Of a stretch of DNA of 64,000 nt, positions 38,141 to 57,104 are shown one piece after another (the first letter of the stretch is position 1; every line of letters begins with the position of its first letter). Below the pieces are notes generated by a model that saw only the letters and a list, made by a program, of their open reading frames with translations, was not told where the DNA came from and did not search any database. A program made the position numbers and the translations under genes. The stretch spans positions 1-64,000 of IMG/VR virus record IMGVR_UViG_3300043425_001539. The stretch is one strand, 5' to 3'.

Positions 38141-39149
38141 TTATTTTTAATTGTAATTCTTCATATGTTATGGAATTAGTTGCGCCTTTTGATAAATTTT
38201 CCACGAATGGAATAAATTCAAGATTTGCAATATGGGAAGCTATTAAAGGGTCTATACACATCTCAAAACAAGATCTGATTGACAAGCTATGATCTATGTG
38301 ATACATCATTTTTCCTCTTTTTATTTCCCAATTATTGCCAAATTTTGCGTTTCCATGGTTGATTAAAGTTTCTTCTGTTAATATTCTAACTAATTTTATA
38401 TATTCATTAAGAGTTAATATTTCTTGATTTATGAGTTTTTCAGATATAAATTTAACATCTTCAATGTCTATACCAAGTTTGGATGCCAACATTTTTCTTT
38501 TAAAAATGTCTACATGCATAGGATTACTTGTGTTATATTTTTGATTAAATGATGATAACCATTTTTCTTTAACATTTTTGTCTGACAGCGGATTTGGACC
38601 ACCGTATTTTTCTTTACATGTATTTTTTGCTTTTTCCTTAACAATGTCACTTTTTTGTGCTATTTCATTTCCGTACTTTATTTTCCAAGTTTTTGCTCTA
38701 GACTCTTTAAATCCTTCTATTTTAAAATTATGATTTACGCCGTATTTTTCTTGTAAGGTATTTTTTCGCTTCGTTTTAATTTCATTTTTTTCCGTCTCGC
38801 TAAGCATTGAATAAGTATTTGAATAAGATTCAGATCGTTTTCTTTTTATTTCTAAATCTTTAGCTTGATTAAATGCTCGACAAGAATGACTACAAAACAT
38901 TTTTTTCCCGCCGTCATTTATCAGAGTATTACATTCTTTACATATATTCATTTCTGTTAATTCATTAAGAATATACGTTATCCTAATTTTAATATCGGTG
39001 TCAGAATTACAAAAAGATGTATTTTCTATTATTAGATTATGTAAATCTTTTCTTTTATATAATTCTTTTTTAACATTTCCTAAATTAGAAGTATTTTTGT
39101 TTTTTTCTAATACAATTTTCCAATTATTTTCTGTAATGTGAAGTTTCAT
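38112..39149 (-). mobile_element. Free-standing HNH-like homing endonuclease between UvsX parts 2 and 3
   Basis: CKEC/CSHSC zinc motifs, T..EKYG repeats, C-terminal HIDH..NL..ENLSKG. Confidence 0.8.
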
Positions 39150-39184
39150 AAGTTTTTATTTATATATCTCCATGAAACTTCACA
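39137..39184 (-). promoter_or_regulatory. 13-bp hairpin sequestering the HEG AUG, with a late promoter in the loop
   Basis: TGTGAAGTTTCAT..GATATATAAATAAAAA..ATGAAACTTCACA. Confidence 0.8.
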
Positions 39185-39203
39185 AATCATACATTTAGTT
39201 TCT

Positions 39204-40409
39204 TTATTGAGTTTGCTGCAAAATAAAATCACCTTCATTTAATTCATCTGCAGTTTTCCAGGAAGTCTCTTTATTCGGATCTTCATCCACAAGAAATTTA
39301 TGTAAAGGAGAACACTCAATTTCAATATTGTCTTCAAAAAATAATTTAACTGTTCTTGTTTTATCATATTTAAAAGTGTTTAACACCTCTTTACCGCCGT
39401 AAACAGTCATAACGGTATCACCTATTTTAATTTCATTAAGTTGTTTAATTTCGCCATTACCCATCATAATTTCTGTATCGCCTAAGGCACAAGCATATGT
39501 GTGATTTGTGAATATAAACGGGATTTTAAATTCTGCAAGATCTGTAGTAATCACACGGAAAAGTGATCTTAGATCTTGTTGTTTTGTCATATCCTTTTTT
39601 TCACTTCCTGATGCTGCATCTGCTTTTTCTTTGGTTGTTGCAAGATTTCCTAAAGAATCAAGAACCAATAAAATTTTAGGTAATTCTGCTCCTTTATCTT
39701 TTGCTTTTTTAAGTTGGTCACAAAGATTAGAAACAAAATGTCGTACTTCAAGTGATGTACTTACAGGTTGATACCGAACTCCTTCAGGGTCTATTCCAAA
39801 GTTACGCATAGTAGTTTCATCAACCGCAGCTTCTGAGTCACAGTATATAATATGATATCCCATTTTTTGGGCTTCACGGCAAGCATTCAAGGTTAAGAAT
39901 GTTTTTCCTGTGTTATGTGAAGATATACCGTCGCCGGCCCAATACCTATGATTTTCATGAAGCACCTCCCAGTCATATACTTCTTCTGTTCTTGTTGCAG
40001 AACATTTTTTTACATTATAAAAGCCATCTTTAGTTAAAACAGAATCCTTTGTTGTTAAATCTTCTGCTTTTTTCCAGCCATTTAATGTTTCATAAAGATG
40101 ATCTTGTGAAGATTCGCATACATAATTATTTTCTAATTCTAATTTGTATATTTTTCTTGGTTTCTTAATATAAAAGTTTCCAATAGGTTGATAACCGTCT
40201 GGTGTATCAATAAAAATTGCCGAATCTTTTAAAGATACTAATTCTCCAGCTGTAATTTCTATTGAATTTTCTTCAGCATGTAAATTAAATCTCTGTATAA
40301 TTTCATTATCCGATAAATGATCAAAATTTTCTTTAGGATAACAAAATTTTAATTCTTCGCGTAAAATTTCAGGGTCATAAATTGCTTTTTCTGTTTCAAG
40401 ATTTTGCAT
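39204..40409 (-). CDS. uvsX: UvsX/RecA part 2: 166-aa IntC, 140-aa extein, 95-aa IntN of a second intein
   Basis: SQDH..VYDWEV..SSHN|TGKT..DSE..VLDSLGNL..FTNHTYA|CALGDT..CSPLHKF..LNEGDFI. Confidence 0.92.
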   Translation of the reverse strand: MQNLETEKAIYDPEILREELKFCYPKENFDHLSDNEIIQRFNLHAEENSIEITAGELVSLKDSAIFIDTPDGYQPIGNFYIKKPRKIYKLELENNYVCESSQDHLYETLNGWKKAEDLTTKDSVLTKDGFYNVKKCSATRTEEVYDWEVLHENHRYWAGDGISSHNTGKTFLTLNACREAQKMGYHIIYCDSEAAVDETTMRNFGIDPEGVRYQPVSTSLEVRHFVSNLCDQLKKAKDKGAELPKILLVLDSLGNLATTKEKADAASGSEKKDMTKQQDLRSLFRVITTDLAEFKIPFIFTNHTYACALGDTEIMMGNGEIKQLNEIKIGDTVMTVYGGKEVLNTFKYDKTRTVKLFFEDNIEIECSPLHKFLVDEDPNKETSWKTADELNEGDFILQQTQ

Positions 40410-40419
40410 ATAGTGTATT

Positions 40420-41562
40420 TTATTTTAAATTTATATTCAATAAGTTTTTGATAGTTTCTTGATTATTTCTTTGATAATCCCAAACTACAAAATATAAAAA
40501 TCCAGCTTCTTCTGCAATACGTTTTTTTTCTTTATCTTTTTGCAATGATTCTTCATAAGTATAAATAGGATTTTTCCAATTTTCTTTTGACTTGTTAGAA
40601 TCAGCGTGCCAAAAACTTCCGTGATATTCAATAATTATCTTTTTTTCAGGAATGACAAAGTCATAAAAATAAATCTTTTTATTTACGTTATCATATAAAA
40701 AATATTCATTTTTTCCGTATAAACAATTAAGATTTATAAAGTAATTTTTTTCTATTTCTTTAAAGAAAATATATGATTCAGTTGAAAAAAATTTGTTTCT
40801 TTTTATTCTTTTACAAATTATTTCTAATTTTTCATCATCTGGTTTATTTGCCCAATTCTTTTTAAATAAGTCTATTCTTTTTTCATATCTTTTTATACCT
40901 TCGTCATAACCGTATTTTTTTACATATGCTTGAAGAGATGTTGTAGTTTGTCTTTCTTTTAATGCATTTTTTGCATCTTCAAGTGTTAAACCGCGTTCCA
41001 AATAAAAACTTAACTGTCTATCAGAAACAGCTTTCCCAAGTTTTTTATACAAAGTATTTTTTATTTTACCTGCGCGTGAACATCTATTAAAAATTTTTTG
41101 TTTAGCCTCTTCTTGCGTTAGACCCTGATTTTTTACAAGCCAATCTGCATTTAAACCATTACCTTTTCTTTTGTTTATTTCTGCTTTTTCTTCTTTTGTT
41201 TTTTTGGAAAGCGTTGCTTGTATTTTTGCAGCAATCTCAGGCGTACAGGTTGATTGTCTTTTCTTAATTTTTTCAATTGCTTGAGCTTTACTCCATCCTC
41301 TGTCTATCCAATAATTAATATTTAATTGGGTTGCAGAAAAAAAACCAATCATTGATAAACAAATTCTGCTTGCCTGTTTTTTTTCGATCTGAACATAATT
41401 ATCAAGATAACGTTGATACATTTTCTCAAATTCGTTTGTGTCTGCATCATAATTAAAATTTGAAACAAGCTGTCTTACATACTTGATATAATCATCGTAA
41501 GACAGCTTGTTTTTAAAAATGCTCAACGGATTTTTACTCTTCGATTGTGTACCTTTCATCAA
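40420..41562 (-). mobile_element. Free-standing Vsr/DUF559-like homing endonuclease between UvsX parts 1 and 2
   Basis: Helical repeats (YW..RG.S..EA), then FYDF..IIIEYHGSFWHA..KD..K..IA...GF....VWD. Confidence 0.8.
40431..40457 (-). promoter_or_regulatory. Middle-type promoter AAACT-N15-AATATAA inside the last HEG codons, upstream of UvsX part 2
   Basis: Minus strand reads AAGAAACTATCAAAAACTTATTGAATATAA. Confidence 0.6.
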
Positions 41563-41818
41563 ATGTGCGGGTTTTCAGTATATATACTTTAACCTTTTCA
41601 TTTTTTGGCAAACATCCTGATTCACCCGCAAAACATATTGATCTTGAGTTTGGGATGCCTCCAAAGAGAGAGCCAGTTAATTGCGCATTTAACATAAAAT
41701 TGCCCGTAGGAATATATTCATCAATTTTAGAAAAAGTGTTGTGAGTGATGATCGATCCTTTAGGATTAATTTTTGACAGCGCTGAATCTAATTCAGAAAA
41801 AGAAAATGATTTAGCCAT
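41534..41818 (-). CDS. uvsX: UvsX/RecA part 1: 68-aa N-extein plus 26-aa split-intein N-fragment
   Basis: IPTGNFMLNAQLTGSLFGGIP..FAGESG|CLPKNEKVKV. Confidence 0.9.
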   Translation of the reverse strand: MAKSFSFSELDSALSKINPKGSIITHNTFSKIDEYIPTGNFMLNAQLTGSLFGGIPNSRSICFAGESGCLPKNEKVKVYILKTRTFDERYTIEE

Positions 41819-41820
41819 TT

Positions 41821-42084
41821 TTAGTTTATAGTATTTTTAAATTCTTGTAATGTTTTTTGTAGATTTGTATGTGAACTTGTTAAAGTTTGTTTGATTGATA
41901 AATATTCACTTTCAGGTAAAACGCTGGTATTAATAGTTTCAATGTATGAATCTCCTATTTCAATTGGTATGATATAGGACTCGGTATAAATATCAGGTTT
42001 TGAATGTAAATCTATATAGTTTACCAATTCATAATTTGAAAGATTATTAACATTTACATAGTGTATAAGAATTTCTTTTCTCAT
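41821..42084 (-). CDS. Hypothetical protein
   Basis: 87-aa ORF coupled to the PolB C-subunit gene. Confidence 0.55.
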   Translation of the reverse strand: MRKEILIHYVNVNNLSNYELVNYIDLHSKPDIYTESYIIPIEIGDSYIETINTSVLPESEYLSIKQTLTSSHTNLQKTLQEFKNTIN

Positions 42085-43262
42085 TAAAACAATTGTGTTC
42101 TGACAATTAATTCCGGTGAAAGCGCAGGTAAACCCATTGCAACTATAAAGCGATTAATAGGATCAATAATACATCGTGCAAATTGCGCATCATAATCAAC
42201 CGGTGGTGCAATTTCTACAGGATAATTACCAGGCAAATATCCAAATACGTTTTCCCCGCCATCATTATTTTTTGCATAATAGAATCTAACCTTGTCGCCG
42301 CTTTTAATTAATTGATACTTATTTTTCCATTTACTATTATTGATTAAAAAATTATGATATCCTGAAGCACGAACGTGCATTGGACAATGGTCATTAATTA
42401 CTAATTTTTTTCTATCATCAGCAATTCCTTTTTCATAATCTCCTATGCTTGAAGACATAGAAATATTTTCAATGTTATCCAACATAAATGTTTCTTTTTC
42501 CCGTTTAAGAATTTCTGTAAATTTGCGTAAATTTAATGATTTACGTTCTCTTAGGATAACTTCAAGCAATTCTTTTAACTTTTTTCTTGCAAATGCTGGT
42601 GTTGAAGATTGAGCAATCTCCACGCCTGTTGCTTTAATTTTTTGTTGTGAATTATAAAAAATTCCGCCATTTGCACCACCTTTCCAAGCAAGATCTAATA
42701 CATATTTCTTTTTCTTTAAAAAGATTCCTGAATATGAAAGGGTTTCCATTTCCAAATCTTGAATATTTTCTGTGCCTGATTTTTTAGCCATAGATTCAAA
42801 ATTTTTCTCAAGATATTCTTTAAGACGATTTTCATAAATCATCATAATTAGTTTTCTTGTATCTTCTTTCCAATCACAGCCATTGACAATTTCTTGTAAA
42901 GTTATATAACAAGAATCCGTGTCTCCATAAACAGCAACCTCATCTTTTACCGGGTTTACTGTGTTTAATCCTAGTAATTCATGAAGCTTTTTATCTTTAT
43001 GCCAAAATTCTAAAAAATAACGATTAATAATTCTGCTTGTAAATTTAATCATTTCTTGTCCTTGTAAAGTAATAGCTTCAGCTACTTTTACGTTATAACC
43101 AACAAAATAAGTTGATGCTAATGCTCCATAACAACTATTAATAAAGATTTTTACAGATTGTTCCTCATTTTTTTTAAGATTCATTAAATATGTTAACCTT
43201 TCTATTTCCGATAAAATTTCTTCTCTAGTTGCAGAAGAAGGATCAATTTTACAGTATTTCAT
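42084..43262 (-). CDS. polB: Family B DNA polymerase, C-terminal subunit (gp43B-like)
   Basis: Motif B QSVKIFINSCYG, AITLQGQ, motif C YGDTDS, KKKY, GVEIAQSSTP. Confidence 0.92.
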   Translation of the reverse strand: MKYCKIDPSSATREEILSEIERLTYLMNLKKNEEQSVKIFINSCYGALASTYFVGYNVKVAEAITLQGQEMIKFTSRIINRYFLEFWHKDKKLHELLGLNTVNPVKDEVAVYGDTDSCYITLQEIVNGCDWKEDTRKLIMMIYENRLKEYLEKNFESMAKKSGTENIQDLEMETLSYSGIFLKKKKYVLDLAWKGGANGGIFYNSQQKIKATGVEIAQSSTPAFARKKLKELLEVILRERKSLNLRKFTEILKREKETFMLDNIENISMSSSIGDYEKGIADDRKKLVINDHCPMHVRASGYHNFLINNSKWKNKYQLIKSGDKVRFYYAKNNDGGENVFGYLPGNYPVEIAPPVDYDAQFARCIIDPINRFIVAMGLPALSPELIVRTQLF

Positions 43263-43278
43263 TAAAAATTGTTTAAAT

Positions 43279-43305
43279 TTATATTCATTATTTATTAAAT
43301 AGTTT
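43279..43305 (-). promoter_or_regulatory. Middle-type promoter AAACT-N15-AATATAA for the PolB C-subunit
   Basis: Shared motif. Confidence 0.55.
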
Positions 43306-43389
43306 TTTTTAAAAATATCACCAAATTAATGTTTTTTTCATTTGTGTGTTTTATGTTTTTTATATATAAACAAAAATAATATCATAGAA

Positions 43390-44463
43390 ATGTTTAAAGA
43401 ACTTATTACAAATCACTTAAAAGAATTCGGCACGCTAAAAGGATTTCAGCAAAAATATAAAGATTTAATTAAAACCGAAATTATAAACTACCATTCATTT
43501 CAAGAATTTGCTTATTTTCAATATTATGAATTAACAGAACGACCTAAATGTAATTGTGGTTCAAGCGTTTCTTTTCGTGGCTTTGCAAACGGTTATTTAA
43601 AATTTTGTAAACCATGTGGGTTAAAACAAAAATGGATAAACTATGAAAAACCAAACATCAAAGAAGTTAAAAAATGTTTAAATTGCAATAATGAATATGA
43701 ATTCAAGCCAAGAAAAAAAGAACGTTTATTCTGTTCAACTAAATGTTCAGCAAAATATATGCACGAAAATATGAGTAAAGAAAATAAAGAAATGCGTGTA
43801 TCAAAAATTAAAAAAACCAATTTATTAAAATATGGCAGTGAGTGGGTAGTTAATTCAGAATACACAAAAAATAAAACATTTGAAAAACATGGATATTACT
43901 ATCCATTCCAATCGGAAAAAATTTTAAATAAATGTACTGAAACACACAAAAAACTTACAGGATATACAAATCCTTTACATAATCCGTTGACTGTAAAAAA
44001 AATGATTGATACTAAAATGGATAAATATGGAGATTTGCTTAAACCAATATATTCATATAAAGATTTTATTTTACCGTCTGGGACTACAATTAAAGTACAA
44101 GGATATGAAGATCTTGCTATTAATTATTTACTTAAATATTATAAAGAATCGGATATCATAATAGGGCGCGCCCAAATTGAAAAATACACAGGTCCTTTAA
44201 CATATACATCAGGTAATAAAATTCATAGGTATTATCCTGATATTTATATTGCATCAAAAAACTTAGTAATTGAAGTAAAATCCAAATATACTTTTAATTT
44301 GCATAAAGAAAAACTCAATTTTGTATATGACAATTTAAAAAAAGGCCCATTAACATTTCATATATTTATTTTTAATAGTAGAAATGCCAATGAACCTATT
44401 ATTATAGAATCAATTGATGAATTGTGTGTTAGATCTTTACCGCCTGCTCCTCATTTTTTTTAA
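43390..44463 (+). mobile_element. Free-standing PD-(D/E)xK homing endonuclease on the opposite strand (likely ATG at 43390)
   Basis: Zinc ribbons, KT...KYG repeats, VQGYE..YYPDIYI..VIEVKS; late motif TATATATAAAC at 43361-43371. Confidence 0.75.
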
Positions 44464-44548
44464 GATTCATTAAATTGGTTAATCTTGATATTTCAGCTTT
44501 TATTTCATCAATGCTGGAATTATTAGGATCTATTTGGCAATATTTCAT
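44429..44548 (-). pseudogene. 39-aa duplicate of the PolB C-subunit N-terminus
   Basis: MKYCQIDPNNSSIDEIKAEISRLTNLMNLKKNEEQAVKI* is 27/39 identical to the start of 42084-43262. Confidence 0.9.
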
Positions 44549-44569
44549 ATTTATAATTTTTATAAACTT

Positions 44570-44600
44570 AGCGGTTCTTGTTTATTTGACAAGAACCGCT
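44570..44600. terminator. 12-bp hairpin after the clamp gene (no clear U tract)
   Basis: AGCGGTTCTTGT/ACAAGAACCGCT. Confidence 0.5.
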
Positions 44601-44607
44601 GTTTAAA

Positions 44608-47462: not shown

Positions 47463-47495
47463 AAAAAAACAGAGGAATTTAAAATTCCTCTGTTT
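47463..47495 (-). terminator. Intrinsic terminator
   Basis: AAACAGAGGAATTT/AAATTCCTCTGTTT with a U tract. Confidence 0.8.
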
Positions 47496-48283: not shown

Positions 48284-50125
48284 TTAAATTCTTCCTTCAA
48301 GCCACTTTTTTCTTTTGTCTGATGATACACCAAATGCAATGTCAATAAATTTTCCAGCTGACCTATCTTGTCTTACTTTGAACATTTTTCTTTCAGCCAT
48401 AATTACTTGCCAATCTTCAATGCTTAAAGATCCTAAACCTTTTAAATATCGAACTCCTTTATAAGCTTGTCCGCTTTTTTCAAATTCACCCCATTCTTGC
48501 AATGAATAAAAATATTTGCGTTTATTATTTACTTCGGCTGAAACAAGAGGAGTTATTAAAATATTTAATTTGCCTTGCTCAATTACTTGAGGAAACCATT
48601 TATAAAAAAGATTAATTACCAAAGATGCAATATGTCCAATTCCATCAGGATCCCAATCAGTTGCAATTGCAATGTTGGCAAAAGAACATTTACTTCCGTC
48701 TTTAGGTTCAAGATTTAAGATATTCATTAAATCAATAATTTCATTGTTTGTACTTAAATCTGATAGACTCCTTGCATTTTTAATTTTTCCTTTTAATGAA
48801 TAAACAGCATCAACTCGCGGATCTCTTTTTTGTAAAATTGAACCCATAGCCGAAGACCCTTCTACAATAAATAAAGTTCCTTTACTTCCTGACGGCGGAA
48901 AATACTTGTCGCTGATTTTCTTTGCTGCTGCTCTCTTTTTACTTTTGATTGCATTTAAATCTTGTTTAAGATTACGCTCGTCAATTTTCTTCTTTACATT
49001 TTCATAAAATTCTGATCTTAATACTCCATTTTTTAGTTTTTTATAAAATTCTTTTTCAAGTAAAGGTTGAATTTCCCACCGGCCTGCAGCATATTTAGTT
49101 TTATTTTGATCCGCAAATCTAACCAATTTAGGAGGTACATTTAAAACTAAAAATGTATCATAAAAGTGATGGCCTAATTGATAGTCAAGCATTTCGTTGA
49201 TCCAATCAATAAATATTTTTTGATGAATGCCTGTGCAGATAGCGCCATTCACAAAAGATGCGCTTGCGCCGTTTTCATATTTTTCCCAAGCAAAAAATAT
49301 TCCCAATTTGGTTTTAAACATAAGTGCATTATCAGGCAAAAAAGGCAAATTAAGATCAAGCTTCTCGCCATCAAACACAAATTCAATTTCCAAATTGGAA
49401 ATTACCGGGTCTTCCTTTTTAAGGAATTGCCGAAAAATAAACATTGTATGCAAATACTCTTTATCCCATGTGCAATTTTTAAAAACATCTTTTCTTGGAA
49501 TATAAGTTACTGTTGTTCCTGTAACAGCATTCTTTTTCTTTTCGGTTTTCTCTTCTTTGTCTTTGACAAATTTTGTCCAATGAACTTCAAAATGAACCTC
49601 ATTATTTGTGGTTGATACACTAAATTCATCAGACAACATATTAACCAATGCAGCGCCTACGCCGTTTGTTCCGATAAGAGAGTCTGATGAATTTTCGTTA
49701 TAAAAATTTGAACCTGCTCGCAACATTGACATTGCTGTCTCAACATTTGATTGTCCTGTTTTAGGATTAGGCTTTTCTGCATTTATAAATCCGCTTCCAG
49801 TATCTGTTACGGTTACCTGATTTGTTTTGGAATTTATTTCTACCGTAATCTTCGGCATTGTGCCTTTCATTCTTTTTGCTTCGTCAAAAGCATTGTCTAC
49901 AATCTCATTGAGCATTTTGTAGAATCCAACTGAAACAATTTTATTTTTTTCTACAAGTTTGCCATTTTCCACAATTTGAACTTTTTCTTCTGTCTTTTCT
50001 ACACTTCCTATATACATAGTTGGTCTAGCAAGACAGTGTTCAAAATCGCTTAATGCAACTATGGTTTTATTGTCATATTTTGACCTTTTTTCTTTTTCTA
50101 AATCCTTCGGATCTTTATTTGCCAT
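48284..50125 (-). CDS. Type II topoisomerase, ATPase/TOPRIM subunit (gp39+60/GyrB-like)
   Basis: RPTMYIGS, EIVDNAFDE, DTGSG, GTNGVG, EGSSA, LKGK, TDWDPDG, YLKGLGS. Confidence 0.93.
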   Translation of the reverse strand: MANKDPKDLEKEKRSKYDNKTIVALSDFEHCLARPTMYIGSVEKTEEKVQIVENGKLVEKNKIVSVGFYKMLNEIVDNAFDEAKRMKGTMPKITVEINSKTNQVTVTDTGSGFINAEKPNPKTGQSNVETAMSMLRAGSNFYNENSSDSLIGTNGVGAALVNMLSDEFSVSTTNNEVHFEVHWTKFVKDKEEKTEKKKNAVTGTTVTYIPRKDVFKNCTWDKEYLHTMFIFRQFLKKEDPVISNLEIEFVFDGEKLDLNLPFLPDNALMFKTKLGIFFAWEKYENGASASFVNGAICTGIHQKIFIDWINEMLDYQLGHHFYDTFLVLNVPPKLVRFADQNKTKYAAGRWEIQPLLEKEFYKKLKNGVLRSEFYENVKKKIDERNLKQDLNAIKSKKRAAAKKISDKYFPPSGSKGTLFIVEGSSAMGSILQKRDPRVDAVYSLKGKIKNARSLSDLSTNNEIIDLMNILNLEPKDGSKCSFANIAIATDWDPDGIGHIASLVINLFYKWFPQVIEQGKLNILITPLVSAEVNNKRKYFYSLQEWGEFEKSGQAYKGVRYLKGLGSLSIEDWQVIMAERKMFKVRQDRSAGKFIDIAFGVSSDKRKKWLEGRI

Positions 50126-50173: not shown

Positions 50174-50223
50174 TTATATCACACAAAAGAAAAAAGTTCT
50201 GTAGAAGTCATCTACAGAACTTT
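50174..50223 (-). terminator. Terminator hairpin overlapping the middle-type promoter GAACT-N14-GATATAA
   Basis: AAAGTTCTGTAGA/TCTACAGAACTTT inverted repeat. Confidence 0.7.
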
Positions 50224-50246
50224 GTATCTTAAATATTTTAAATATT

Positions 50247-50702
50247 TTAATTTTCAGAAAGAGTAACCATGTATCTATACATAAATCCTTTAATCTCCAT
50301 TGATTTACCTATTTGACTGGATTTAAAACCCATTGCTTTTAATCGGCTAATAACACCATCCCTGCCTCTGTTAGTCTCACAACGATAAATCAATCTACGT
50401 TCTCCATTATATTCTACCAATTCTTGAGTGTTTGCACCTATTTCCCAAGCATCTTTTGTAAGTAATTCTTCAAATTTGGGGTCTTTGGCAAATTTGTTGC
50501 TTTCATTGATAAATTTATCATATTCCTGTCCGTAGCCATTACTTGTTAGAATATCTTCAACATCTTCTAATGAATAATTGTTTGGCAATTCTTTTTTAAG
50601 CCAAGATAAGCTTGGATTTGCTTTAATGATTTTATTTACCAATTTTTCTGGTGTAATTTTTCCTTCGTTGATAAAACTGTCAAAATCTTTAATGGGTTTC
50701 AT
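50247..50702 (-). CDS. Hypothetical protein with a capsid-targeting-like N-terminus (ATG at 50702)
   Basis: MKPIKDFDSFINE; internal DKFINE. Confidence 0.65.
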   Translation of the reverse strand: MKPIKDFDSFINEGKITPEKLVNKIIKANPSLSWLKKELPNNYSLEDVEDILTSNGYGQEYDKFINESNKFAKDPKFEELLTKDAWEIGANTQELVEYNGERRLIYRCETNRGRDGVISRLKAMGFKSSQIGKSMEIKGFMYRYMVTLSEN

Positions 50703-50718
50703 GCTTGTGTTTTTTTTA

Positions 50719-51288
50719 TTAAACATTTCTTTTTCTAAAGGTCCAAGGACTAACTTTAATTCCTTTTTGACCCCATAGACCAAGTTTTTGTTTTTTTGCA
50801 TTTTTTTGTAATTCTTTAAGTTTCTCTCTTTCTTCTTTAGGCATTTCTTTACCCGGATCATAAAACCAAGCATACCCATTTTCAATTAAGTACTCCGATA
50901 AATCTTTACCGTTTACATAAATTTTTGCAACCATTCTGTCATAAATATCAGCATACATAGGAACTACATAAACGCATTCTCCTTTAATTTTTTCTCTTAC
51001 ATGATCGCCAGCTTCCCTGCCAAAAATTTGGGTTTTTCTTACATAAGGAGAATAAACTTCTGGGCAATCTGCTGCATACAATCTTACCCAAACAAATGTA
51101 TTTGTGGTAGAAGTATCAAACTTAATTTTGTAACTGTCACCATCATGGACAGCAAAAACTTTTGCATTAGTTGCTATGCTGTCGGATTGAGTGTAGACTG
51201 TTGTGTCGGTTGCTATACTGTCAGTTTGTGCATAAGCTGTTACAGTTGAAAAAATAGATAATAATAAAATTTTTAGTAAGTTTTTCAT
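50719..51288 (-). CDS. Thermonuclease (staphylococcal nuclease family) with signal peptide
   Basis: HDGDS, VRL..ADCPE, DIYDR, LIENGYAW, AK..KLGLW. Confidence 0.88.
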   Translation of the reverse strand: MKNLLKILLLSIFSTVTAYAQTDSIATDTTVYTQSDSIATNAKVFAVHDGDSYKIKFDTSTTNTFVWVRLYAADCPEVYSPYVRKTQIFGREAGDHVREKIKGECVYVVPMYADIYDRMVAKIYVNGKDLSEYLIENGYAWFYDPGKEMPKEEREKLKELQKNAKKQKLGLWGQKGIKVSPWTFRKRNV

Positions 51289-51309
51289 AAATGTTTTTTT
51301 TTTTTATTT

Positions 51310-51600
51310 TTAATCGACTACAAATACTAAGTAAACTTTGCCATCTGTATTACGCCATCCAATGTAAGGAATATCAGCGTTTTCAAGTTCTTTTGCCATT
51401 CTATTTGATTGAGTCTGAATTTTTACATCAACGAATGCAAGATCCTCAGGAAATGCATTATTATCTTCCATAAAATTATTAAGTAAATTATCAACGCCTG
51501 TTATATTCATATCTGAGTATTCATTGGCATTCCACTTATTTTTGAATTGCTGGCCTTTTCCTTCATTCAAGAAGGCTTCACATTCTTTGATGTGTTTCAT
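51310..51600 (-). CDS. Small acidic protein, paralog 2, capsid-targeting-like N-terminus
   Basis: MKHIKECEAFLNE; similar to 51614-51916. Confidence 0.75.
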   Translation of the reverse strand: MKHIKECEAFLNEGKGQQFKNKWNANEYSDMNITGVDNLLNNFMEDNNAFPEDLAFVDVKIQTQSNRMAKELENADIPYIGWRNTDGKVYLVFVVD

Positions 51601-51613
51601 AATTTTTTTATTT

Positions 51614-51916
51614 TTAATCGACTACAAATACCAAATAATCTTCATCGTCATCAGCATTATGCCAATCAATATAAGGAAGATTAGCTGTTTCGAGCTCTTT
51701 TGTCATTTGCTTAACCTGAGATTGAGATTTCATTGTTACATTAACAAATGCAACGTCATCAGGTGAAGCATTGTTATCTTCCATAAAAGTATTAAGTAGG
51801 TCAACATCATCACCTATTATGCTCATGTCCCAATACTCATCGGCATCCCATTTATTTTTTAAATGTTCGCCTTTTCCTTCGTTCAAGAAGGATTCAAATT
51901 CTTTGATATGTTTCAT
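51614..51916 (-). CDS. Small acidic protein, paralog 1 (ATG at 51916)
   Basis: MKHIKEFESFLNE; late motif at 51931-51941. Confidence 0.75.
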   Translation of the reverse strand: MKHIKEFESFLNEGKGEHLKNKWDADEYWDMSIIGDDVDLLNTFMEDNNASPDDVAFVNVTMKSQSQVKQMTKELETANLPYIDWHNADDDEDYLVFVVD

Positions 51917-51939
51917 ATTTTTTAATTTTATTTTATATA

Positions 51940-53766
51940 TCATTTTATTTCTGAATATAACATAATTTTCATACCTTTTTTGTTTGCCGTTGACATTTTT
52001 GAGCTTGAGGATGCCAAATCATCGGTAAACAAAACTTTTGCATCTTTTATACCTGCGTGGTAATAACCTTTTGATTTTGCAAATTCTAAAAATTCTTCTT
52101 TTGTTTTAAATCCAGCTGATTTAGGAGAACCTGTAAATTCACAAGGAATCATATCATCTGCAATTTTTTCAGGCATAACTATTTCCAAAAACTTTGAAAG
52201 ATTTTGAACTGCACTTTCATATTTCTCTCTCTTTTTTTCACCTTGGCCAAATCCTGATATTACTGTTTTTTCCAAACCTGCAAAATTATATTTTACACCT
52301 GAGAGCATATTTCCAATTTGCTTTGCTGATGAATATCCCATTCCAGGAAATCCTAACATTAATACAACATCAGCAGGTTTAAGTGTTTTGATTTTGGCAA
52401 TTTCGTTAAACATATTATCAACAGTTTTACCAGGCTTGAGATCACTGTTTGCATATAAATGTTGTTTGGTAAATTTAGTAGGATCAAGTATTTCAACAGC
52501 TGATCTATATCCTGCTTTCCAAAGTTGTTTAATCATTGCTCCACCGACGCCATCAATTCCTAATTGTTGAACTCCTTGAGCAAACATATTATAAGCAATG
52601 TTTTCACAAGTAGGATTAACACACATTAAGTGAATTCCTTGTGTGTGTAATTCTGAGCCACATTTGCAAGTTTTAGGAACAATTAGATTATTGCGAGATC
52701 CTTGAACAACAACCCGAGTAATTTGAGGAATAATGTCTCCGGATTTTGCGATCGCAACAGTTGCACCCGGAAAAGCTCCTTTAGATAATAAATATCCGTA
52801 ATTAAATAAAGCGGCGCGGGAAACGGTTGTTCCGTCAAGTTCAACAGGTTCCATTACAGCAACCGGTGTTACTTCACCTGTTTTGCCGTATTGCCAAGAT
52901 ATTCCAGTTATTTTGGTTATTGCTTCTTTAGGTGGGAATTTAATTGCAACCGCCCAATTTGGATCATGTGAATTTTCTCCCCACACAGGACGAATTTCTT
53001 CGGGCGCCTTAATTACAAATCCGTCTAATTGATATTCACAAGTATTACGGTATTTTAACATTTTTTCATACACATCAGCAAAGTTTGTTGCCTGATTTTT
53101 AAATGTGTATGGTTGATATTTAAAATTCAAAGAAGATGTATCAGTATAAATAACATTCTCGTTTTCGTGGATTTTAACCTCGACAGGAATAAAATCCAAA
53201 TCAGCAATAACACTTGTAGGATTTTCGTCGCGGTTTAAAACACCAGCAACATAATTTCTTGGATTTTTAAAATCGGAATATTTTTGATTAAATGTAGCAA
53301 TTTTAATTACAACCTCACCGCGTACCTCCACAATACCTTTTACATCGATGCTGTCTGGAACATTGTGCTTTACCTTTTCTGTAATATCTCTGCCTTTATT
53401 GCCATTTCCTCGTGACAATATTTGTATCAACTTACCATCTTGATATATGACGTTTGCGGCGTTGCCGTCATATTTTGGAGAAAACTCAAATTCAACTTTA
53501 CCAAATTGTTTCATCCAATTGGACGCTGATTCAATTGGCGGTTTTCCCGACAAAGATGCTTGATATTTTGATAATGAAAGCATCGGAGATGGGTGGGAAT
53601 ATTTTGCCTTACGATCTGATGCTCCTACTTTATGTGGAGCATCAGATCCAAGTAATAGCAATTGTTTTTCTATGTGGTCAAATTCATCGTCAGAAACAAT
53701 AGGCGTCCCAGCATAATAGGCATCTTTTGCTTCAAAGTAAAGTTGTTCTAATTGAAACCTTTCCAT
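51940..53766 (-). CDS. ligA: NAD-dependent DNA ligase (ATG at 53766)
   Basis: YYAG.P..SDDEFD, PMLSL, KYDG, RGNG..G.DIT, EVRGE, NPRN, AIKF, GDIIP, zinc finger, BRCT-like end. Confidence 0.93.
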   Translation of the reverse strand: MERFQLEQLYFEAKDAYYAGTPIVSDDEFDHIEKQLLLLGSDAPHKVGASDRKAKYSHPSPMLSLSKYQASLSGKPPIESASNWMKQFGKVEFEFSPKYDGNAANVIYQDGKLIQILSRGNGNKGRDITEKVKHNVPDSIDVKGIVEVRGEVVIKIATFNQKYSDFKNPRNYVAGVLNRDENPTSVIADLDFIPVEVKIHENENVIYTDTSSLNFKYQPYTFKNQATNFADVYEKMLKYRNTCEYQLDGFVIKAPEEIRPVWGENSHDPNWAVAIKFPPKEAITKITGISWQYGKTGEVTPVAVMEPVELDGTTVSRAALFNYGYLLSKGAFPGATVAIAKSGDIIPQITRVVVQGSRNNLIVPKTCKCGSELHTQGIHLMCVNPTCENIAYNMFAQGVQQLGIDGVGGAMIKQLWKAGYRSAVEILDPTKFTKQHLYANSDLKPGKTVDNMFNEIAKIKTLKPADVVLMLGFPGMGYSSAKQIGNMLSGVKYNFAGLEKTVISGFGQGEKKREKYESAVQNLSKFLEIVMPEKIADDMIPCEFTGSPKSAGFKTKEEFLEFAKSKGYYHAGIKDAKVLFTDDLASSSSKMSTANKKGMKIMLYSEIK

Positions 53767-53786
53767 ATTTGTTTGAATAATTATAT

Positions 53787-53820
53787 TACAAATATACAAC
53801 TATTTGTTGAATAAAAAAAA
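53787..53820 (-). promoter_or_regulatory. Early (host-sigma) promoter, TAnnTTTG type
   Basis: TATATTTG at 53789-53796 in the same context as the other two copies. Confidence 0.7.
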
Positions 53821-53869
53821 TTTTTAGGTAACTTTTTTTCTTAAAAAGTGTTAAAATTTTCTATAAGAT

Positions 53870-54544
53870 TTAATCTAATTTAAGAATAATATTTTTTAGC
53901 TTAGCACAGTTTTCATATTCTTCGCTTTCAACATACATATCTATCATTTGATTCAATGTAAGAATCATATCATTTATATTTTTGACAGTTACTAATATGT
54001 CTTCATCTTCATATAAAATTAAATCTTTTAATATGTCAATTTCCGATGTTGTAATAAATTCAAATATTGACCTAAAAAAATCTTTTATTTCTTTTTCCTG
54101 CTCGTTAAGATTAGGATCATATATCCATTCTTCTTTAATACTTATGGAATTTAAAATATCATCAACTTCATATGAATTTTCGATGTCCGATTCTTGCATA
54201 AGTTGTTTAAGTATTAATACAGATTGTACGGTTAATAAAAAACTATTGTCTATTTCTGATGATGAATGGCTTAATTCTGTATCTTTGCACAAACCCCATT
54301 CAATAGGTAATTGCTGTGAAGGTATAACCAAAACTTCTCCACGTAAAGACATATTAAAAACGTCAGATGCAATTTTATTAATAGGGCCTTCTTTTAATGA
54401 TTCATTATAAATTATCCAAACAGGCCCAATTTTGATTGGAGCAACCCATCCTTTAATTAATTCATTTAATCCACCAACGTCAAAACAGTCTGATGGCGGA
54501 TTGACTGTTTTGACGATGGATTCAGTTGTTATTAAAACTGCCAT
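53870..54544 (-). CDS. Hypothetical protein with a C-terminal UvrB/C-like motif
   Basis: ESEEYENCAKLKNII. Confidence 0.6.
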   Translation of the reverse strand: MAVLITTESIVKTVNPPSDCFDVGGLNELIKGWVAPIKIGPVWIIYNESLKEGPINKIASDVFNMSLRGEVLVIPSQQLPIEWGLCKDTELSHSSSEIDNSFLLTVQSVLILKQLMQESDIENSYEVDDILNSISIKEEWIYDPNLNEQEKEIKDFFRSIFEFITTSEIDILKDLILYEDEDILVTVKNINDMILTLNQMIDMYVESEEYENCAKLKNIILKLD

Positions 54545-54566
54545 AAATTATTTGTTATTTTCGTAA

Positions 54567-55646
54567 TCATCCTTCACAACTTACGCAATCTGGGTCAGTT
54601 GCTCTTGCTGCTATATCACCTCGTAATACACTTTCTGTCCTTGTATAATATAAAGTTTTAATACCTTGTCGCCAAGCTTCCATATGTACTTGGTTAATCC
54701 ATTTAGGTTCAGCGCTTGAAGGGAAGGCAAGATTTAAAGAGACAGATTGATCTATGTATTGTTGTCGTATCCCAGCTTGCTTGACTAAATCCAATTGATT
54801 AATTTCTTTAAATGTCTTAAATACATCTTTAACCATATTGCATCTGTTTTGCTCATCTTGAGTTAATTCGTTAAAATTACACACCTTTCCGTCAAGAAAA
54901 CACCAGGAATCCAAAAAGTCCAGTCCTTGAATAGAACCGCCGTCCACAAAAATTTGATCCCAAACTTCTTTGGTATTTTTACCAATTCCTTCAAGTACTT
55001 TTTCAAGTTCGTGGTTTTTTCTAATAAAAGTTCCTTTTGCAGTTTGCTCAGTAAAAACATTGGCAGCCCAAGGCTCAATACCTGAAGATACGTTTCCACT
55101 TAATTTGGAATTTGACACAGTTGGAGCAACAGCACGTAAATGTGTATTTCTAAATCCTGTGTCTTTGCACCATAAAGGTTCACCGTATTCGTTTGCCAAA
55201 TCTCTACTTGCTCTTTCGCTTTCAATTTTTAATTGTGAAAAAATTCTGCGAGTTTCAAACTGAGCCTGTAGGCCTTCAAAAGGAATTCCGTTTTGTTGCA
55301 AATATGTATGCCATCCAAGTACGCCTAATCCTAATGCTCTTCCTTTTTCAGCTGATCTTACAGCATTTTCAAAGCCTTTCATATTTTTGGCTTTTTGTAT
55401 AAATTCCTCTAAAACTCCATCCAAAAACCAAGTAGCTGTATACATCAAATCCGTATCTTTCCACTCGTTGTATTTAGCAAGATTGAGAGAACTTAAACAA
55501 CAAACAAAAGAGTGCGATTCATCAGTGAAAAGCACAATTTCACTACAATTATGGACTAATATATCATTAGCATAAAAGTTTTTATTTTCAGCAACTGTTA
55601 TATCATAAACCGGTTCACGTTTTGTTGTTTTTTTAATTTTTAACAT
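54567..55646 (-). CDS. nrdA: Ribonucleotide reductase alpha C-part preceded by a 33-aa split-intein C-fragment
   Basis: VYDITV..NFYANDILVHN|CSEI..CCLSSLNL, APT, DQSVS.NL, KTLYY, CVSCEG. Confidence 0.93.
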   Translation of the reverse strand: MLKIKKTTKREPVYDITVAENKNFYANDILVHNCSEIVLFTDESHSFVCCLSSLNLAKYNEWKDTDLMYTATWFLDGVLEEFIQKAKNMKGFENAVRSAEKGRALGLGVLGWHTYLQQNGIPFEGLQAQFETRRIFSQLKIESERASRDLANEYGEPLWCKDTGFRNTHLRAVAPTVSNSKLSGNVSSGIEPWAANVFTEQTAKGTFIRKNHELEKVLEGIGKNTKEVWDQIFVDGGSIQGLDFLDSWCFLDGKVCNFNELTQDEQNRCNMVKDVFKTFKEINQLDLVKQAGIRQQYIDQSVSLNLAFPSSAEPKWINQVHMEAWRQGIKTLYYTRTESVLRGDIAARATDPDCVSCEG

Positions 55647-57055
55647 GTTTCAACTTTATTTTTTATTTTTATAAATTCAAATTGATCTAAATGAGTTTCT
55701 AAATTTTCTTTTAATTTTTGTGAAAATCTAGAAGAATTTGAATTTTCTTCAATTATCCTAGATTCATTTATATTATACTTTATCTCTGCAATACATTTAT
55801 CGTTTATTATTAAATAAAACATTACTTCACCCCAGTCTGGTTCAACTGTATAAAAGAACAAACCGTTACTAATAAAATAGCTTTTGGTTGGCAAATTCTT
55901 TATTATTTCATTTCTAGTAAGTCCTATAGAAATTCCCTTATTAGGTTCTATATTTTCCATTTCATGTGTTTTTTGATATATTTCCATTTCTTTCATTTTT
56001 TTAAAGTCTTTTATTGATAAGCCTTCTATGTTTGTTAGAAAAATATAATTATGATACTTTGCAGAAAACATAACACAATCTTGTATTTTTTCAAAATTTG
56101 ATTCATCTCTAATATATCCTTTTAATTCTATTAAATATTCTTCGTTATCAATATTAATAATAAAATCTGGCGTATATAATTTAGAGCCAATGCAAATAGT
56201 TACATTTTCATAAGACCAACTTTCTAATATATTTTCATTTGGTTTAATTATTTTTTCTATAAACTCAGATTCTAAAGAAGATCTAGTAATAAAAGGTTCT
56301 GTATTAAGGCATTTTTTAAAATCTGCGTTGTTAAATTCTGTTCTTTTAAATATTGGATTACCCATTGAATTTGAACCCATTATTGAATGATATGTCCCTA
56401 TTATAGAATTTATAATTTTATATGCCTCATCTAAATTACTGTCGGTTAAGTTTTTTAAGATATCTTTATCATAATATTTTTTATAAGCTTCTTTATTCCA
56501 AAAGTTTTGTATTTTAGATAATTTATATTCATCGCTATTAACTATCTTTCGTCGAAACTGCGAATAAATTTTATCTACATTTTCATTGGAGACGCCATCC
56601 AAGAAATATCCTTTATTTGATAAAACCAATCTTTTCCAATCTGTAGTATTAAATTCTTTATCGTAAGATTTTCGTTTATCTGTCCAATTATCCTTCTTAT
56701 TTTTTAAATTAGGTCTACCTTTAAGTTTTTTAGAGTGATCTGGTCTTCTTTTACCTCTAAATGAATGTCCCCTATTATAATTAGCATCTTTTACATCATG
56801 TCTAAATGTTATATTATCAAAAATTTTGTATTTGTTATCATCAACTTCAGATTTACAAACTTTTAAGAAATCATCTAATGTTAAGATTTTATTTTTTATA
56901 ATATACTTTAGTACATAAAAATATTTATCTTTATAGACTTTCTTACAAATATGTATAATACTTGAATCTATTAAATCTTCAATTTTTTCAATATTTTTTT
57001 TGATAGTTAATACAGATAGTTTTTTATACCCTTGTAATACTTCTAAAGTGTTCAT
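55640..57055 (-). mobile_element. Free-standing PD-(D/E)xK homing endonuclease between the nrdA halves (likely ATG at 57055)
   Basis: GKRRPDHSKKLKG (NUMOD-like); RSSLE..WSYE..YTPDF..LIELKG. Confidence 0.75.
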
Positions 57056-57104
57056 GACCAATATAAATTTTATTTATGTTATATATTCAAGTCATGAACA
57101 CTTT
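57045..57104 (-). promoter_or_regulatory. 14-bp hairpin sequestering the HEG AUG, with a late-like promoter in the loop
   Basis: AAAGTGTTCATGAC..GAATATATAAC..GTCATGAACACTTT. Confidence 0.8.

What the first reader, a model, noticed from the sequence alone, without database searches (positions are those of the whole stretch)
39137..57104. Two unrelated HEGs share an AUG-burying hairpin with a late promoter in the loop
Seen: perfect stems at 39137-39149/39172-39184 (13 bp) and 57045-57058/57091-57104 (14 bp). The 3' arm of each covers the ATG and first codons, and each loop holds an ATATATA late motif. The two stems differ in sequence. Established: T4 I-TevI-type HEGs are silenced on early/middle mRNA by a hairpin over the ribosome-binding site and released by a late promoter. 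Inference: the same logic adapted to an SD-independent host by hiding the start codon itself, letting the fractured-gene mRNA be made early without making nuclease.
Basis: partly seen in the sequence, partly recalled or inferred. Interest (0 to 1): 0.7.

Follow-up and report, generated by a model that had tools for sequence, protein, structure and literature searches.

The report
Start-codon hairpins silencing two homing endonucleases
Two unrelated selfish nuclease genes, each lodged inside a split-intein "fractured" gene of a freshwater T4-like jumbo phage, have their start codons locked in conserved RNA hairpins with a late-promoter-like box in the loop; the feature is real, but this design was already shown in T4/Aeh1 and already predicted for fractured genes in 2009.

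Summary
Both perfect stems (13 and 14 bp) exist, lie on the coding (minus) strand, pair the ATG and first codons, and carry an ATATATA box in the loop. They are not chance: perfect hairpins of 13 bp or more number 14 in the genome against 1.0 in shuffles.

They are under selection. A 64%-identical HEG2 homologue keeps the stem through three base-pair swaps on both sides. HEG1 homologues at about 60% identity keep the non-coding 5' arm, freeze minority codons in the 3' arm, and absorb changes as G·U pairs.

The box GATATATA(A/G) is the phage's main upstream motif. It precedes sheath, baseplate, tail-fibre and head-closure genes, and the genome encodes a gp55-type late sigma factor. The host is Shine-Dalgarno-less, with Bacteroidota-type early promoters.

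The two ORFs are unrelated nucleases: an HNH/DUF7487 type in a triply split uvsX, and a Bax1-like PD-(D/E)xK type in nrdA.

The same device also sits on at least one non-nuclease gene. The design (hairpin plus late promoter at fractured-gene endonucleases) was described by Dassa et al. 2009 and demonstrated for T4 I-TevI and Aeh1 mobE. Verdict: a real, well-supported new member of a known kind. Transcription start sites and timing remain untested.

The parts
39137..39184 (-). Hairpin 1: 5' arm 39184->39172, loop 39171->39150, 3' arm 39149->39137, which holds the ATG (39149-39147) and codons 2-5 of HEG1. RNAfold adds two G·U/A-U closing pairs.
   Evidence: dG -16.6 kcal/mol, z -4.0. Conserved in L005, L006-8, L010, L013 and L033.
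39157..39168 (-). Promoter-like box GATATATAAATA in loop 1. It contains both the genome's GATATATA(A) box and the exact T4 late consensus TATAAATA, 8-19 nt upstream of the ATG.
   Evidence: The box is kept in all HEG1-family loops while other loop positions vary.
38112..39149 (-). HEG1: 345-aa free-standing HNH-type homing endonuclease (DUF7487; phrog_3339). Its 3' end overlaps the downstream intein-C gene by 29 nt.
   Evidence: (HIDH...HIENL...NENLSKG conserved).
39204..40409 (-). Middle piece of uvsX: Hint-like N-terminus (probable intein-C of the first split), RecA/UvsX core, then intein-N of the second split. It ends 54 nt before the HEG1 ATG.
   Evidence: L013 homologue shows ...SSHN|TGKTF and UvsX motifs.
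37391..38140 (-). Intein-C plus the UvsX C-terminal piece.
57045..57104 (-). Hairpin 2: 5' arm 57104->57091, loop 57090->57059, 3' arm 57058->57045, which holds 3 nt of leader, the ATG (57055-57053) and codons 2-4 of HEG2.
   Evidence: 3rd most stable TIR of 304; dG -22.3, z -6.7. L003 and L019 keep it with compensatory changes.
57071..57088 (-). Promoter-like box(es) in loop 2: GAATATATAAC (57088->57078), overlapping CATAAATA (57078->57071).
   Evidence: GATATATA is present at the aligned place in L003 and L019.
55640..57055 (-). HEG2: 471-aa free-standing PD-(D/E)xK nuclease with no Pfam or PHROG family. Its 3' end overlaps the downstream intein-C gene by 7 nt.
   Evidence: invariant E283, P296-D297, E310-x-K312; pLDDT 87; Bax1, TnsA, Card1, Cas4 folds.
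57110..58240 (-). RNR large subunit N-terminal part plus intein-N. It ends 54 nt before the HEG2 ATG.
54567..55646 (-). Intein-C plus the RNR large subunit C-terminal part.
27473..27817 (-). gp55-type late sigma factor, the presumed reader of the loop boxes.
   Evidence: T4 gp55, E 0.002; phrog_234 late sigma transcription factor, E 1.6e-13.

Best explanation
Each hairpin is an mRNA structure that keeps the endonuclease untranslated on read-through transcripts of the fractured host gene. Transcripts that begin upstream (nrdB/nrdA-N, or uvsX) contain both arms. The 13-15 bp stem then buries the AUG and the first codons. In a host that does not use Shine-Dalgarno pairing, an unstructured start region is the main thing the ribosome needs, so this blocks initiation. 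A gp55-type promoter box, GATATATA(A/G) (a relative of T4's TATAAATA), lies in the loop. Any transcript started from it lacks the 5' arm, so the AUG is free and the nuclease is made. That transcript would have a 10-20 nt leader for HEG2 and an almost leaderless one for HEG1. The phage uses the same device on other genes, such as the probable tail-type gene at genome 107101..107958, so it is a general late-gene switch that the two endonucleases have adopted. Shown here: the structure, its position, its conservation and covariation, the box and its genome-wide enrichment, the lack of SD, the gp55 homologue, and the absence of a terminator upstream. Inferred: promoter activity, late timing, and the translational effect.
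For: Structure and statistics. HEG2-family covariation: window AAAGTGTTCATGAC/GTCATGAACACTTT against L003 AAAGTACCCATGAC/GTCATGGGTACTTT gives three pairs changed on both sides, with 97.8% of cells paired against 29-40% when the partner is slid. L019 keeps a 17-position stem with one G·U and one mismatch. L021, which has a different N-terminus, still pairs its AUG (z -2.5). HEG1 family: the non-coding 5' arm is unchanged in four of six relatives at 54-63% protein identity (L033 has one A>G absorbed as G·U; L009 one mismatch and one G·U), while the loops drift. Codons 2-5 use the same codon in 50/55 same-residue pairs against 1702/3028 elsewhere, and the frozen codons are minority ones (CTT 21%, CAC 32%). 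G·U-compatible changes in L033, L019, L009 and the window fit a sense-strand RNA. Box: TATATAA lies within 60 nt upstream of 53/306 genes against 5.8 expected. It precedes sheath, head-closure, gp15-like, baseplate-wedge and tail-fibre genes. A gp55 homologue is present. No SD and Bacteroidota-type early promoters. No terminator-like site between the upstream gene and either HEG. Precedents: PMC2988022, PMC2677866.
Against: No 5' ends or timing data. The two metatranscriptome runs hold only short unoriented contigs inside the ORFs, and DNA carry-over cannot be excluded. The box also precedes some replication-type genes (nrdB, the DnaB-like helicase), sometimes only 13 nt from the ATG, so 'late-specific' is unproven. 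More distant HEG2 relatives lack the design: L004 has a TTG start 1 nt after the upstream stop, and L020 has AGGAGG in the loop with z -1.0. Only three sequences carry the covariation, and the shuffle control is not significant on its own (47/500). The three adjacent swaps could be one templated event. Leaving 1.0-1.4 kb of mRNA untranslated ahead of the intein-C half raises an unanswered question about polarity on the downstream extein gene. The genome also holds unexplained perfect inverted repeats inside ORFs.
Confidence: 0.7

Rival explanations
1. Constitutive attenuator: the hairpin lowers endonuclease translation at all times (limiting toxicity or host-gene damage) and no promoter fires in the loop. 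The TATATA run is just AT-rich loop sequence, or a box that is not used here.
For: No start site has been mapped. The L020 and L021 loops have no clear box. The box is common in this AT-rich genome and not restricted to late genes.
Against: The box is retained at the aligned loop position in nine close homologues of two unrelated families while neighbouring loop bases change. It is about 9-fold enriched upstream of genes. Stems enclosing it are about 10-fold or more enriched over random positions. A gp55 homologue exists. The established T4/Aeh1 cases work through the promoter.
Confidence: 0.15
2. DNA-level palindrome: the inverted repeat acts in DNA, as a cruciform, as a binding site for the endonuclease itself (autorepression, as I-TevI does at its late promoter), or as a quasi-palindrome kept perfect by template switching. 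It does not act as an mRNA structure.
For: The stems are perfect, which is unusual for RNA elements. The genome has many other perfect repeats, some inside ORFs. I-TevI binds an operator overlapping its own late promoter (PMC2988022). Three adjacent swaps on both arms could be a single templated event.
Against: Several homologues tolerate changes only as G·U on the sense strand, which would be C·A mismatches in DNA or antisense: L033, L019, L009 and the closing pair in the window. The arm spacing varies from 17 to 32 nt. The 3' arm is always placed on the start codon, which has no meaning for a DNA site.
Confidence: 0.07
3. Transcript-end element: the hairpin terminates, processes (for example by RNase III) or stabilises the 3' end of the upstream extein-N mRNA.
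For: It sits 5-19 nt after the upstream stop codon.
Against: There is no U-tract. The loops of 22-32 nt are far larger than those of intrinsic terminators. The terminator scan finds nothing there, while it does find the genuine short-loop terminators at 47467-47495 and 50193-50223. The 3' arm lies in coding sequence. Termination would uncouple the two extein halves.
Confidence: 0.05
4. Chance complementarity in AT-rich DNA.
For: The genome is 32% G+C.
Against: Shuffle expectations of 1.0 and 0.37 against 14 and 9 observed. 0 of 200 shuffles fold as well. Conservation and compensation in homologues.
Confidence: 0.01

Closest known systems
Hairpin-plus-late-promoter elements upstream of endonuclease ORFs in 'fractured genes' (Dassa et al. 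2009, NAR 37:2560, PMC2677866)
   Same: Split-intein halves flank a free-standing endonuclease. There is an RNA hairpin at the endonuclease 5' region (15 of 16 loci there), and a late-promoter element inside it (10 loci there). The endonuclease 3' end overlaps the downstream gene (6-69 bp there; 7 and 29 nt here). nrdA is a host gene, apparently split just before the radical cysteine (read on the 46%-identical relative L004, ...NI|CLSGD; not read in the window). An endonuclease-less allele also exists.
   Different: The endonucleases there were GIY-YIG or Vsr-like; here they are HNH/DUF7487 and a Bax1-like PD-(D/E)xK family. uvsX was not among their host genes. Their box was TATAAATA in cyanophage-like contigs; here the genome-wide box is GATATATA(A/G), in a phage with a Shine-Dalgarno-less, Bacteroidota-type host. 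Here the stem is shown to covary across homologues, which that paper did not test.
Aeh1 mobE within nrdA (Gibb & Edgell 2007, 2009; summarised in PMC2988022)
   Same: A free-standing HNH endonuclease splits the RNR large-subunit gene and is co-transcribed with the halves. A hairpin blocks its translation and a late promoter is embedded so that late transcripts escape.
   Different: No intein is involved in Aeh1. There the hairpin sequesters a Shine-Dalgarno site; here there is no SD and the AUG itself is paired. The Aeh1 case is experimentally demonstrated; this one is predicted.
T4 I-TevI / I-TevII / I-TevIII, segB, and the late genes e, soc, 49, 25, 26 (PMC2988022; PMC3014915)
   Same: Late genes carried on early or middle polycistronic RNA, silenced by a structure over the initiation region and freed by a gp55 late promoter placed inside the structure. 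In both phages the device is used on nucleases and on structural genes.
   Different: The T4 examples are intron-encoded or intergenic and SD-dependent. I-TevI adds autorepression at the promoter, which was not examined here.

Membership tests
T4-type late switch (translation-blocking hairpin with an internal late promoter) | A stable local structure that occludes the translation-initiation region | tested here: met
   AUG pairing probability 0.98-1.00. z -6.7 and -4.0, with 0 of 200 shuffles as stable.
T4-type late switch (translation-blocking hairpin with an internal late promoter) | A late promoter placed so that its transcripts lack the 5' arm | tested here: inconclusive
   A box matching the genome's enriched upstream motif (and, in loop 1, TATAAATA exactly) lies in both loops and is conserved in homologues. 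No transcription start has been mapped.
T4-type late switch (translation-blocking hairpin with an internal late promoter) | The gene is embedded in, and co-oriented with, an upstream transcription unit with no terminator | tested here: met
   Same strand, 54-nt spacers. No terminator-like site in either spacer.
T4-type late switch (translation-blocking hairpin with an internal late promoter) | A gp55-type late sigma factor is encoded by the phage | tested here: met
   ORF 27473..27817: phrog_234 at E 1.6e-13; T4 gp55 at E 0.002. T4 gp45 found no match.
T4-type late switch (translation-blocking hairpin with an internal late promoter) | Protein made only late; repression relieved by stem disruption | not testable with these tools
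   Needs an infection time course or reporter assays. The phage is uncultured (IMG/VR record).
Fractured gene (split intein with an intervening free-standing endonuclease) | Intein-N at the end of the upstream extein ORF and intein-C at the start of the downstream one | tested here: met
   PF14890 N-part hits at the ends of 57110..58240 and 39204..40409; C-part hits at the starts of 54567..55646 and 37391..38140.
Fractured gene (split intein with an intervening free-standing endonuclease) | A separate endonuclease ORF between the halves, overlapping the downstream gene | tested here: met
   HEG1 and HEG2 ORFs, with overlaps of 29 and 7 nt. Nuclease signatures.
Fractured gene (split intein with an intervening free-standing endonuclease) | Protein trans-splicing restores the host enzyme | not testable with these tools
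   Biochemical.
Homing endonuclease (mobile) | Presence/absence polymorphism and co-conversion of flanks | tested here: inconclusive
   One contig in run X4 joins 38204 to 39174, lacking 969 bp of HEG1. One contig in X5 is near-identical over the HEG1 5' end, hairpin and intein-N end, but 16% diverged upstream. L013 carries a decayed HEG1. L009 lacks the Vsr-like ORF. Each rests on a single contig.
HNH endonucleases (HEG1) | H-N-H catalytic motif | tested here: inconclusive
   Conserved HIDH...HIENL...NENLSKG in 7 sequences and homing-endonuclease PHROGs. However, Pfam HNH (PF01844) and HNH_3 do not hit it, and it was not folded.
PD-(D/E)xK nucleases (HEG2) | E...PD...ExK catalytic residues on a restriction-endonuclease-like fold | tested here: met
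   Invariant E283, P296-D297, E310, K312 in 50 sequences. Model pLDDT 87. Best PDB matches are Bax1 (prob 0.95-1.0), TnsA, Card1 and Cas4, with weak E-values (>=4e-3).

The most novel reading that the evidence does not exclude
In T4-like jumbo phages of Shine-Dalgarno-less (Bacteroidota-type) hosts, the T4 late switch has been rebuilt around the start codon alone. A diverged gp55 reads GATATATA(A/G) boxes, late mRNAs are short-leadered or nearly leaderless, and AUG occlusion is the sole means of silencing. The same genome's many perfect inverted repeats inside coding sequences would then be a further, undescribed layer of RNA-level control or a mutational (template-switch) signature.
Probability: 0.3. 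Interest if true: 0.45.

Novelty: new member of a known kind. Interest (0 to 1): 0.3.

Why it matters
It shows that the T4 rule 'transcribe early, translate late' for selfish nucleases holds in a very distant, uncultured T4-like jumbo phage whose host ignores Shine-Dalgarno sequences. It also supplies what the 2009 description lacked: comparative evidence (compensatory swaps, frozen synonymous sites, G·U tolerance) that these hairpins are under selection. In practice it gives a candidate late-promoter motif and a gp55 homologue for a poorly known group of freshwater phages. It adds two endonuclease types (HNH/DUF7487 and Bax1-like PD-(D/E)xK) and a new host gene (uvsX, split twice) to the catalogue of fractured genes, which are the source of the fast split inteins used in protein engineering. 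It does not open a new question.

Tried and rejected
1. Phage-collection BLAST of the locus gave only weak hits to unannotated huge-phage records.
2. Rfam scan of the window found no family, so the in-ORF stems are not known introns or riboswitches.
3. The 16-bp stem at 41463-41512 was considered as a third AUG-burying hairpin for the Vsr-like ORF. It was rejected because it lies in codons 16-32, 47 nt after the ATG. The 14-bp stem at 6623-6668 is likewise mid-gene in a deaminase-like ORF.
4. Single-protein scans of viral contigs returned only identical copies. The HEG2 profile scans of metagenome and viral contigs returned nothing new.
5. RNA evidence: two metatranscriptome runs hold only 150-244-nt unoriented contigs inside the HEG2 and nrdA-N ORFs. 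There is no contig across the hairpin and there are no 5' ends. The DNA runs carry hairpin 2 unchanged, so they give no population-level covariation.
6. A short upstream ORF ending in ATGA on the HEG1 start was considered as a coupling device. It was rejected because it is not conserved in L005, L006 or L010 (reading).
7. T4 gp45 and ribosomal protein bS21 found no match in the genome.
8. PDB sequence searches with both endonuclease profiles found nothing significant.
9. Sigma-70-type promoter matches are not enriched (95 against 104 in shuffles).
10. The 'helicase' label for the first fractured gene (from a weak RecA/DnaB-type Pfam hit) was replaced by uvsX.

Full report
**What is there**

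The window is the first 64 kb of a 238,475-bp uncultured virus record: IMG/VR, one contig, 84% complete by CheckV, 31.9% G+C. Of 306 crudely called ORFs, 289 are on the minus strand.

It is a distant T4-like myovirus, with a T4-type portal, large terminase, sheath, gp15-like protein and clamp loader. Near-identical DNA occurs in freshwater, wastewater and subsurface metagenomes.

Both claimed stems are exact. On the coding strand:

- Hairpin 1 is TGTGAAGTTTCAT, a 22-nt loop, then ATGAAACTTCACA.
- Hairpin 2 is AAAGTGTTCATGAC, a 32-nt loop, then GTCATGAACACTTT.

The ATGs at 39149 and 57055 are the starts of ORFs 38112..39149 (HEG1) and 55640..57055 (HEG2). All homologues begin at the same methionine.

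**Context**

Each ORF lies between an extein-N/intein-N ORF and an intein-C/extein-C ORF. This is the 'fractured gene' arrangement.

- HEG2 interrupts the class I RNR large subunit.
- HEG1 interrupts uvsX, not a helicase. The 94-aa ORF 41534..41818 is the UvsX N-terminus (phrog_97). The homologous contig L013 shows UvsX motifs and an ...SSHN|TGKTF junction.
- uvsX is therefore in three pieces. A Vsr-like ORF (40420..41559) sits in the first gap and HEG1 in the second.
- Both HEGs overlap the downstream gene, by 29 and 7 nt. Both are preceded by a 54-nt spacer with no terminator-like site.

**The two endonucleases are unrelated**

| | HEG1 | HEG2 |
|---|---|---|
| Family evidence | DUF7487; homing-endonuclease PHROGs; conserved HIDH...HIENL...NENLSKG signature | No Pfam or PHROG hit; about 100 relatives |
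| Catalytic residues | HNH-type motif | Invariant E283, P296-D297, E310-x-K312 |
| Fold | Not modelled | Confident model (pLDDT 87); best solved-structure matches are PD-(D/E)xK nucleases: Bax1, TnsA, Card1, Cas4 (weak E-values) |

Profile-profile comparison of the two families gives a probability of 0.4%.

**More than chance**

- Perfect hairpins with 3-60-nt loops: 14 of >=13 bp against 1.0 in dinucleotide shuffles, and 9 of >=14 bp against 0.37.
- Folding -65..+20 of all 304 usable starts ranks HEG2 third and HEG1 fourteenth. The AUG pairing probability is 1.00 and 0.98.
- With the tool's own shuffles, z = -6.7 and -4.0.

**Comparative evidence**

HEG2 family:

- L003 (64% identical protein, same nrdA context) has a 14-bp stem at the same place with three pairs changed on both sides: G-C to A-U, and U-A to C-G twice. 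Its loop still reads GATATATA.
- L019 keeps 17 stem positions with one G·U and one mismatch, and has GATATATAA in the loop.
- L021, whose N-terminus is different (MRKTV), still pairs its AUG in an imperfect 12-bp stem (z -2.5).
- L020 (AGGAGG in the loop) and L004 (TTG start 1 nt after the upstream stop) do not have the hairpin.
- The formal count on the three alignable sequences: 15 pairs, 97.8% of cells paired against 29-40% when the partner is slid, and 3 pairs with changes on both sides. With only three sequences the shuffle control is not significant on its own (47/500).

HEG1 family (proteins 54-63% identical):

- The non-coding 5' arm is unchanged in L005, L006-8, L010 and L013, while loop bases vary.
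- L033 carries an A-to-G change opposite the U of AUG that is absorbed as G·U, plus further G·U pairs.
- L009 has one mismatch and one G·U (z -0.6).
- Within the 3' arm, same-residue pairs share the same codon in 50 of 55 comparisons, against 1702 of 3028 in the rest of the ORF. The frozen codons are minority ones: Leu CTT at 21% and His CAC at 32%.
- L013 keeps the hairpin although its HEG1 has decayed to 82 residues.

G·U tolerance argues for a sense-strand RNA structure rather than a DNA palindrome.

**The loop box**

- There is essentially no Shine-Dalgarno signal: GGAG at -16..-6 in 2 of 306 genes.
- The dominant upstream motif is TATATAA, in 53 genes against 5.8 expected. It falls into two classes.
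- The first class is twelve near-identical cassettes of about 70 nt at 193-229 kb, in front of small ORFs. They have TTTG-N19-TATATTTG, which is the Bacteroidota sigma-A -33/-7 layout (consensus from my own knowledge). These are presumably early promoters and an indicator of the host.
- The second class is a short GATATATA(A/G) box, mostly 21-35 nt before the ATG. It precedes sheath, head-closure, gp15-like, baseplate-wedge and tail-fibre genes, but also some replication genes.
- The phage encodes a gp55-type late sigma factor at 27473..27817.
- Both loops carry the short box. Loop 1 also contains TATAAATA, the T4 late consensus.
- Because the 5' arm lies upstream of the box, any transcript initiated from the box cannot form the stem. 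That is a matter of geometry, not of the exact start site.

**Not specific to HEGs**

- Among 75 upstream boxes, three are enclosed by stems of >=13 Watson-Crick pairs (0.17% at random positions) and six by stems of >=10 (0.8%).
- The strongest (20 bp, ending 5 nt before the ATG, z -8.2) is at genome 107101..107958. This is a 285-aa protein whose nearest look-alikes are tail-fibre and gp9/10-type proteins (a lead only). It lies just downstream of an Fpg/Nei glycosylase gene.
- Weaker examples are at genome 177851 and at 21364, a head-closure gene.
- Conversely, the Vsr-like ORF, the plus-strand DUF7487 ORF at 43390..44463 and the GIY-YIG gene at genome 111599..112210 have no significant AUG hairpin.
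- So this is the phage's general late-gene device, used by the two endonucleases that sit inside essential, presumably early-expressed genes.

**Mobility**

- One contig in run X4 joins 38204 to 39174. It lacks 969 bp, which is most of HEG1 together with the loop and 3' arm.
- One 979-nt contig in X5 differs at 3 of 432 positions across the HEG1 5' end, hairpin and intein-N end, but at 49 of 313 positions just upstream.
- Both fit gain, loss and co-conversion, but each rests on a single contig.

**What is known**

- The review PMC2988022 states that I-TevI is silenced on early and middle transcripts by a structure over its RBS and freed by a late promoter placed inside it.
- It reports the same arrangement for I-TevII, I-TevIII, segB and Aeh1 mobE (an HNH gene splitting nrdA), and for T4 soc, e, 39, 25, 26 and 49.
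- Dassa et al. 2009 (PMC2677866) described fractured genes in ocean and lake metagenomes. They reported hairpins in 15 of 16 endonuclease 5' regions, ten of them with the TATAAATA element, and overlap with the downstream gene. They proposed exactly this regulation.
- New relative to that paper: the endonuclease types (HNH/DUF7487 and Bax1-like PD-(D/E)xK rather than GIY-YIG or Vsr-like), uvsX as a doubly fractured host gene, the SD-less Bacteroidota-type setting with a variant box, and the covariation evidence.

**Verdict**

Promoter firing, late timing and the translational effect remain untested. It is a new member of a known kind, so interest is modest.

Noticed in passing
window 37391-41818 (-): uvsX is split into three ORFs: 41534..41818, 39204..40409 and 37391..38140. 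The first split has a very short N-side piece and a long Hint-like C-side piece, which looks like an atypically split intein. A Vsr-like ORF (40420..41559) lies in that gap. A related contig (L009) has the same split without that ORF.
   Followed up: partly
window 41463-41512: A perfect 16-bp inverted repeat with an 18-nt loop lies inside the Vsr-like ORF (codons 16-32), 47 nt downstream of its ATG. It is not an AUG-burying hairpin and its function is unknown.
   Followed up: partly
window 3107-3170, 6623-6668, 21241-21309, 49622-49694, 53613-53648, 54478-54515; genome 135657-135716, 198938-199019: Perfect 13-16-bp inverted repeats with 10-50-nt loops lie inside apparent coding sequences (a deaminase-like gene, a GyrB-like gene, the ligase and others). 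15 of the genome's 25 perfect repeats of >=12 bp fall in this 64-kb window. There is no Rfam match. Unexplained.
   Followed up: partly
window 59281-60657 (-) and 42084-43262 (-); 43342-44463 (+): Family B DNA polymerase is encoded as two ORFs (exonuclease plus start of the polymerase domain; rest of the polymerase domain) about 16 kb apart. A second DUF7487 endonuclease-like gene, on the opposite strand, lies next to the C-terminal piece.
   Followed up: no
genome 193604-229438 (outside the window): Twelve near-identical promoter cassettes of about 70 nt (AAAAGTTG...TTTG-N19-TATATTTGTATATAA...) precede small ORFs. They are probably early promoters of Bacteroidota sigma-A type, which points to the host phylum.
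   Followed up: partly
genome 107963-108014 (locus L015): A 20-bp perfect hairpin with GATATATAG in its 12-nt loop ends 5 nt before the ATG of a 285-aa tail-fibre/gp9-10-like protein, just downstream of an Fpg/Nei glycosylase gene. It is the strongest example of the same device in the genome.
   Followed up: partly
window 33277-33633 (-); genome 76347-76757 (-): There are two contiguous mini-inteins. One is near the N-terminus of the SbcC/gp46-like ORF 31723..33642. The other is in a 600-aa ORF outside the window.
   Followed up: no
window 38204/39174 and 38907-39885 (runs X4, X5): A natural allele lacks 969 bp of HEG1. A mosaic contig is near-identical over the HEG1 start, hairpin and intein-N end but 16% diverged upstream. 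Both suggest endonuclease loss and homing-type co-conversion, each from a single contig.
   Followed up: partly
L004:420-440; L020:1470-1503: More distant HEG2 relatives use other start arrangements. L004 has a TTG start 1 nt after the upstream stop with no spacer. L020 has a canonical AGGAGG 9 nt before the ATG, inside a short 8-bp hairpin loop, presumably in a phage of an SD-using host.
   Followed up: partly
window 55969-56210, 56394-56553, 57197-57347: Two metatranscriptome runs contain short contigs identical to parts of the HEG2 ORF and the nrdA-N/intein-N ORF. This may reflect transcription in nature, but DNA carry-over cannot be excluded.
   Followed up: partly
genome 111599-112210 (-): A GIY-YIG homing endonuclease gene has a TATATA box 19 nt upstream. 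A 10-bp stem encloses both the box and the ATG, with the ATG in the loop rather than in the stem.
   Followed up: partly
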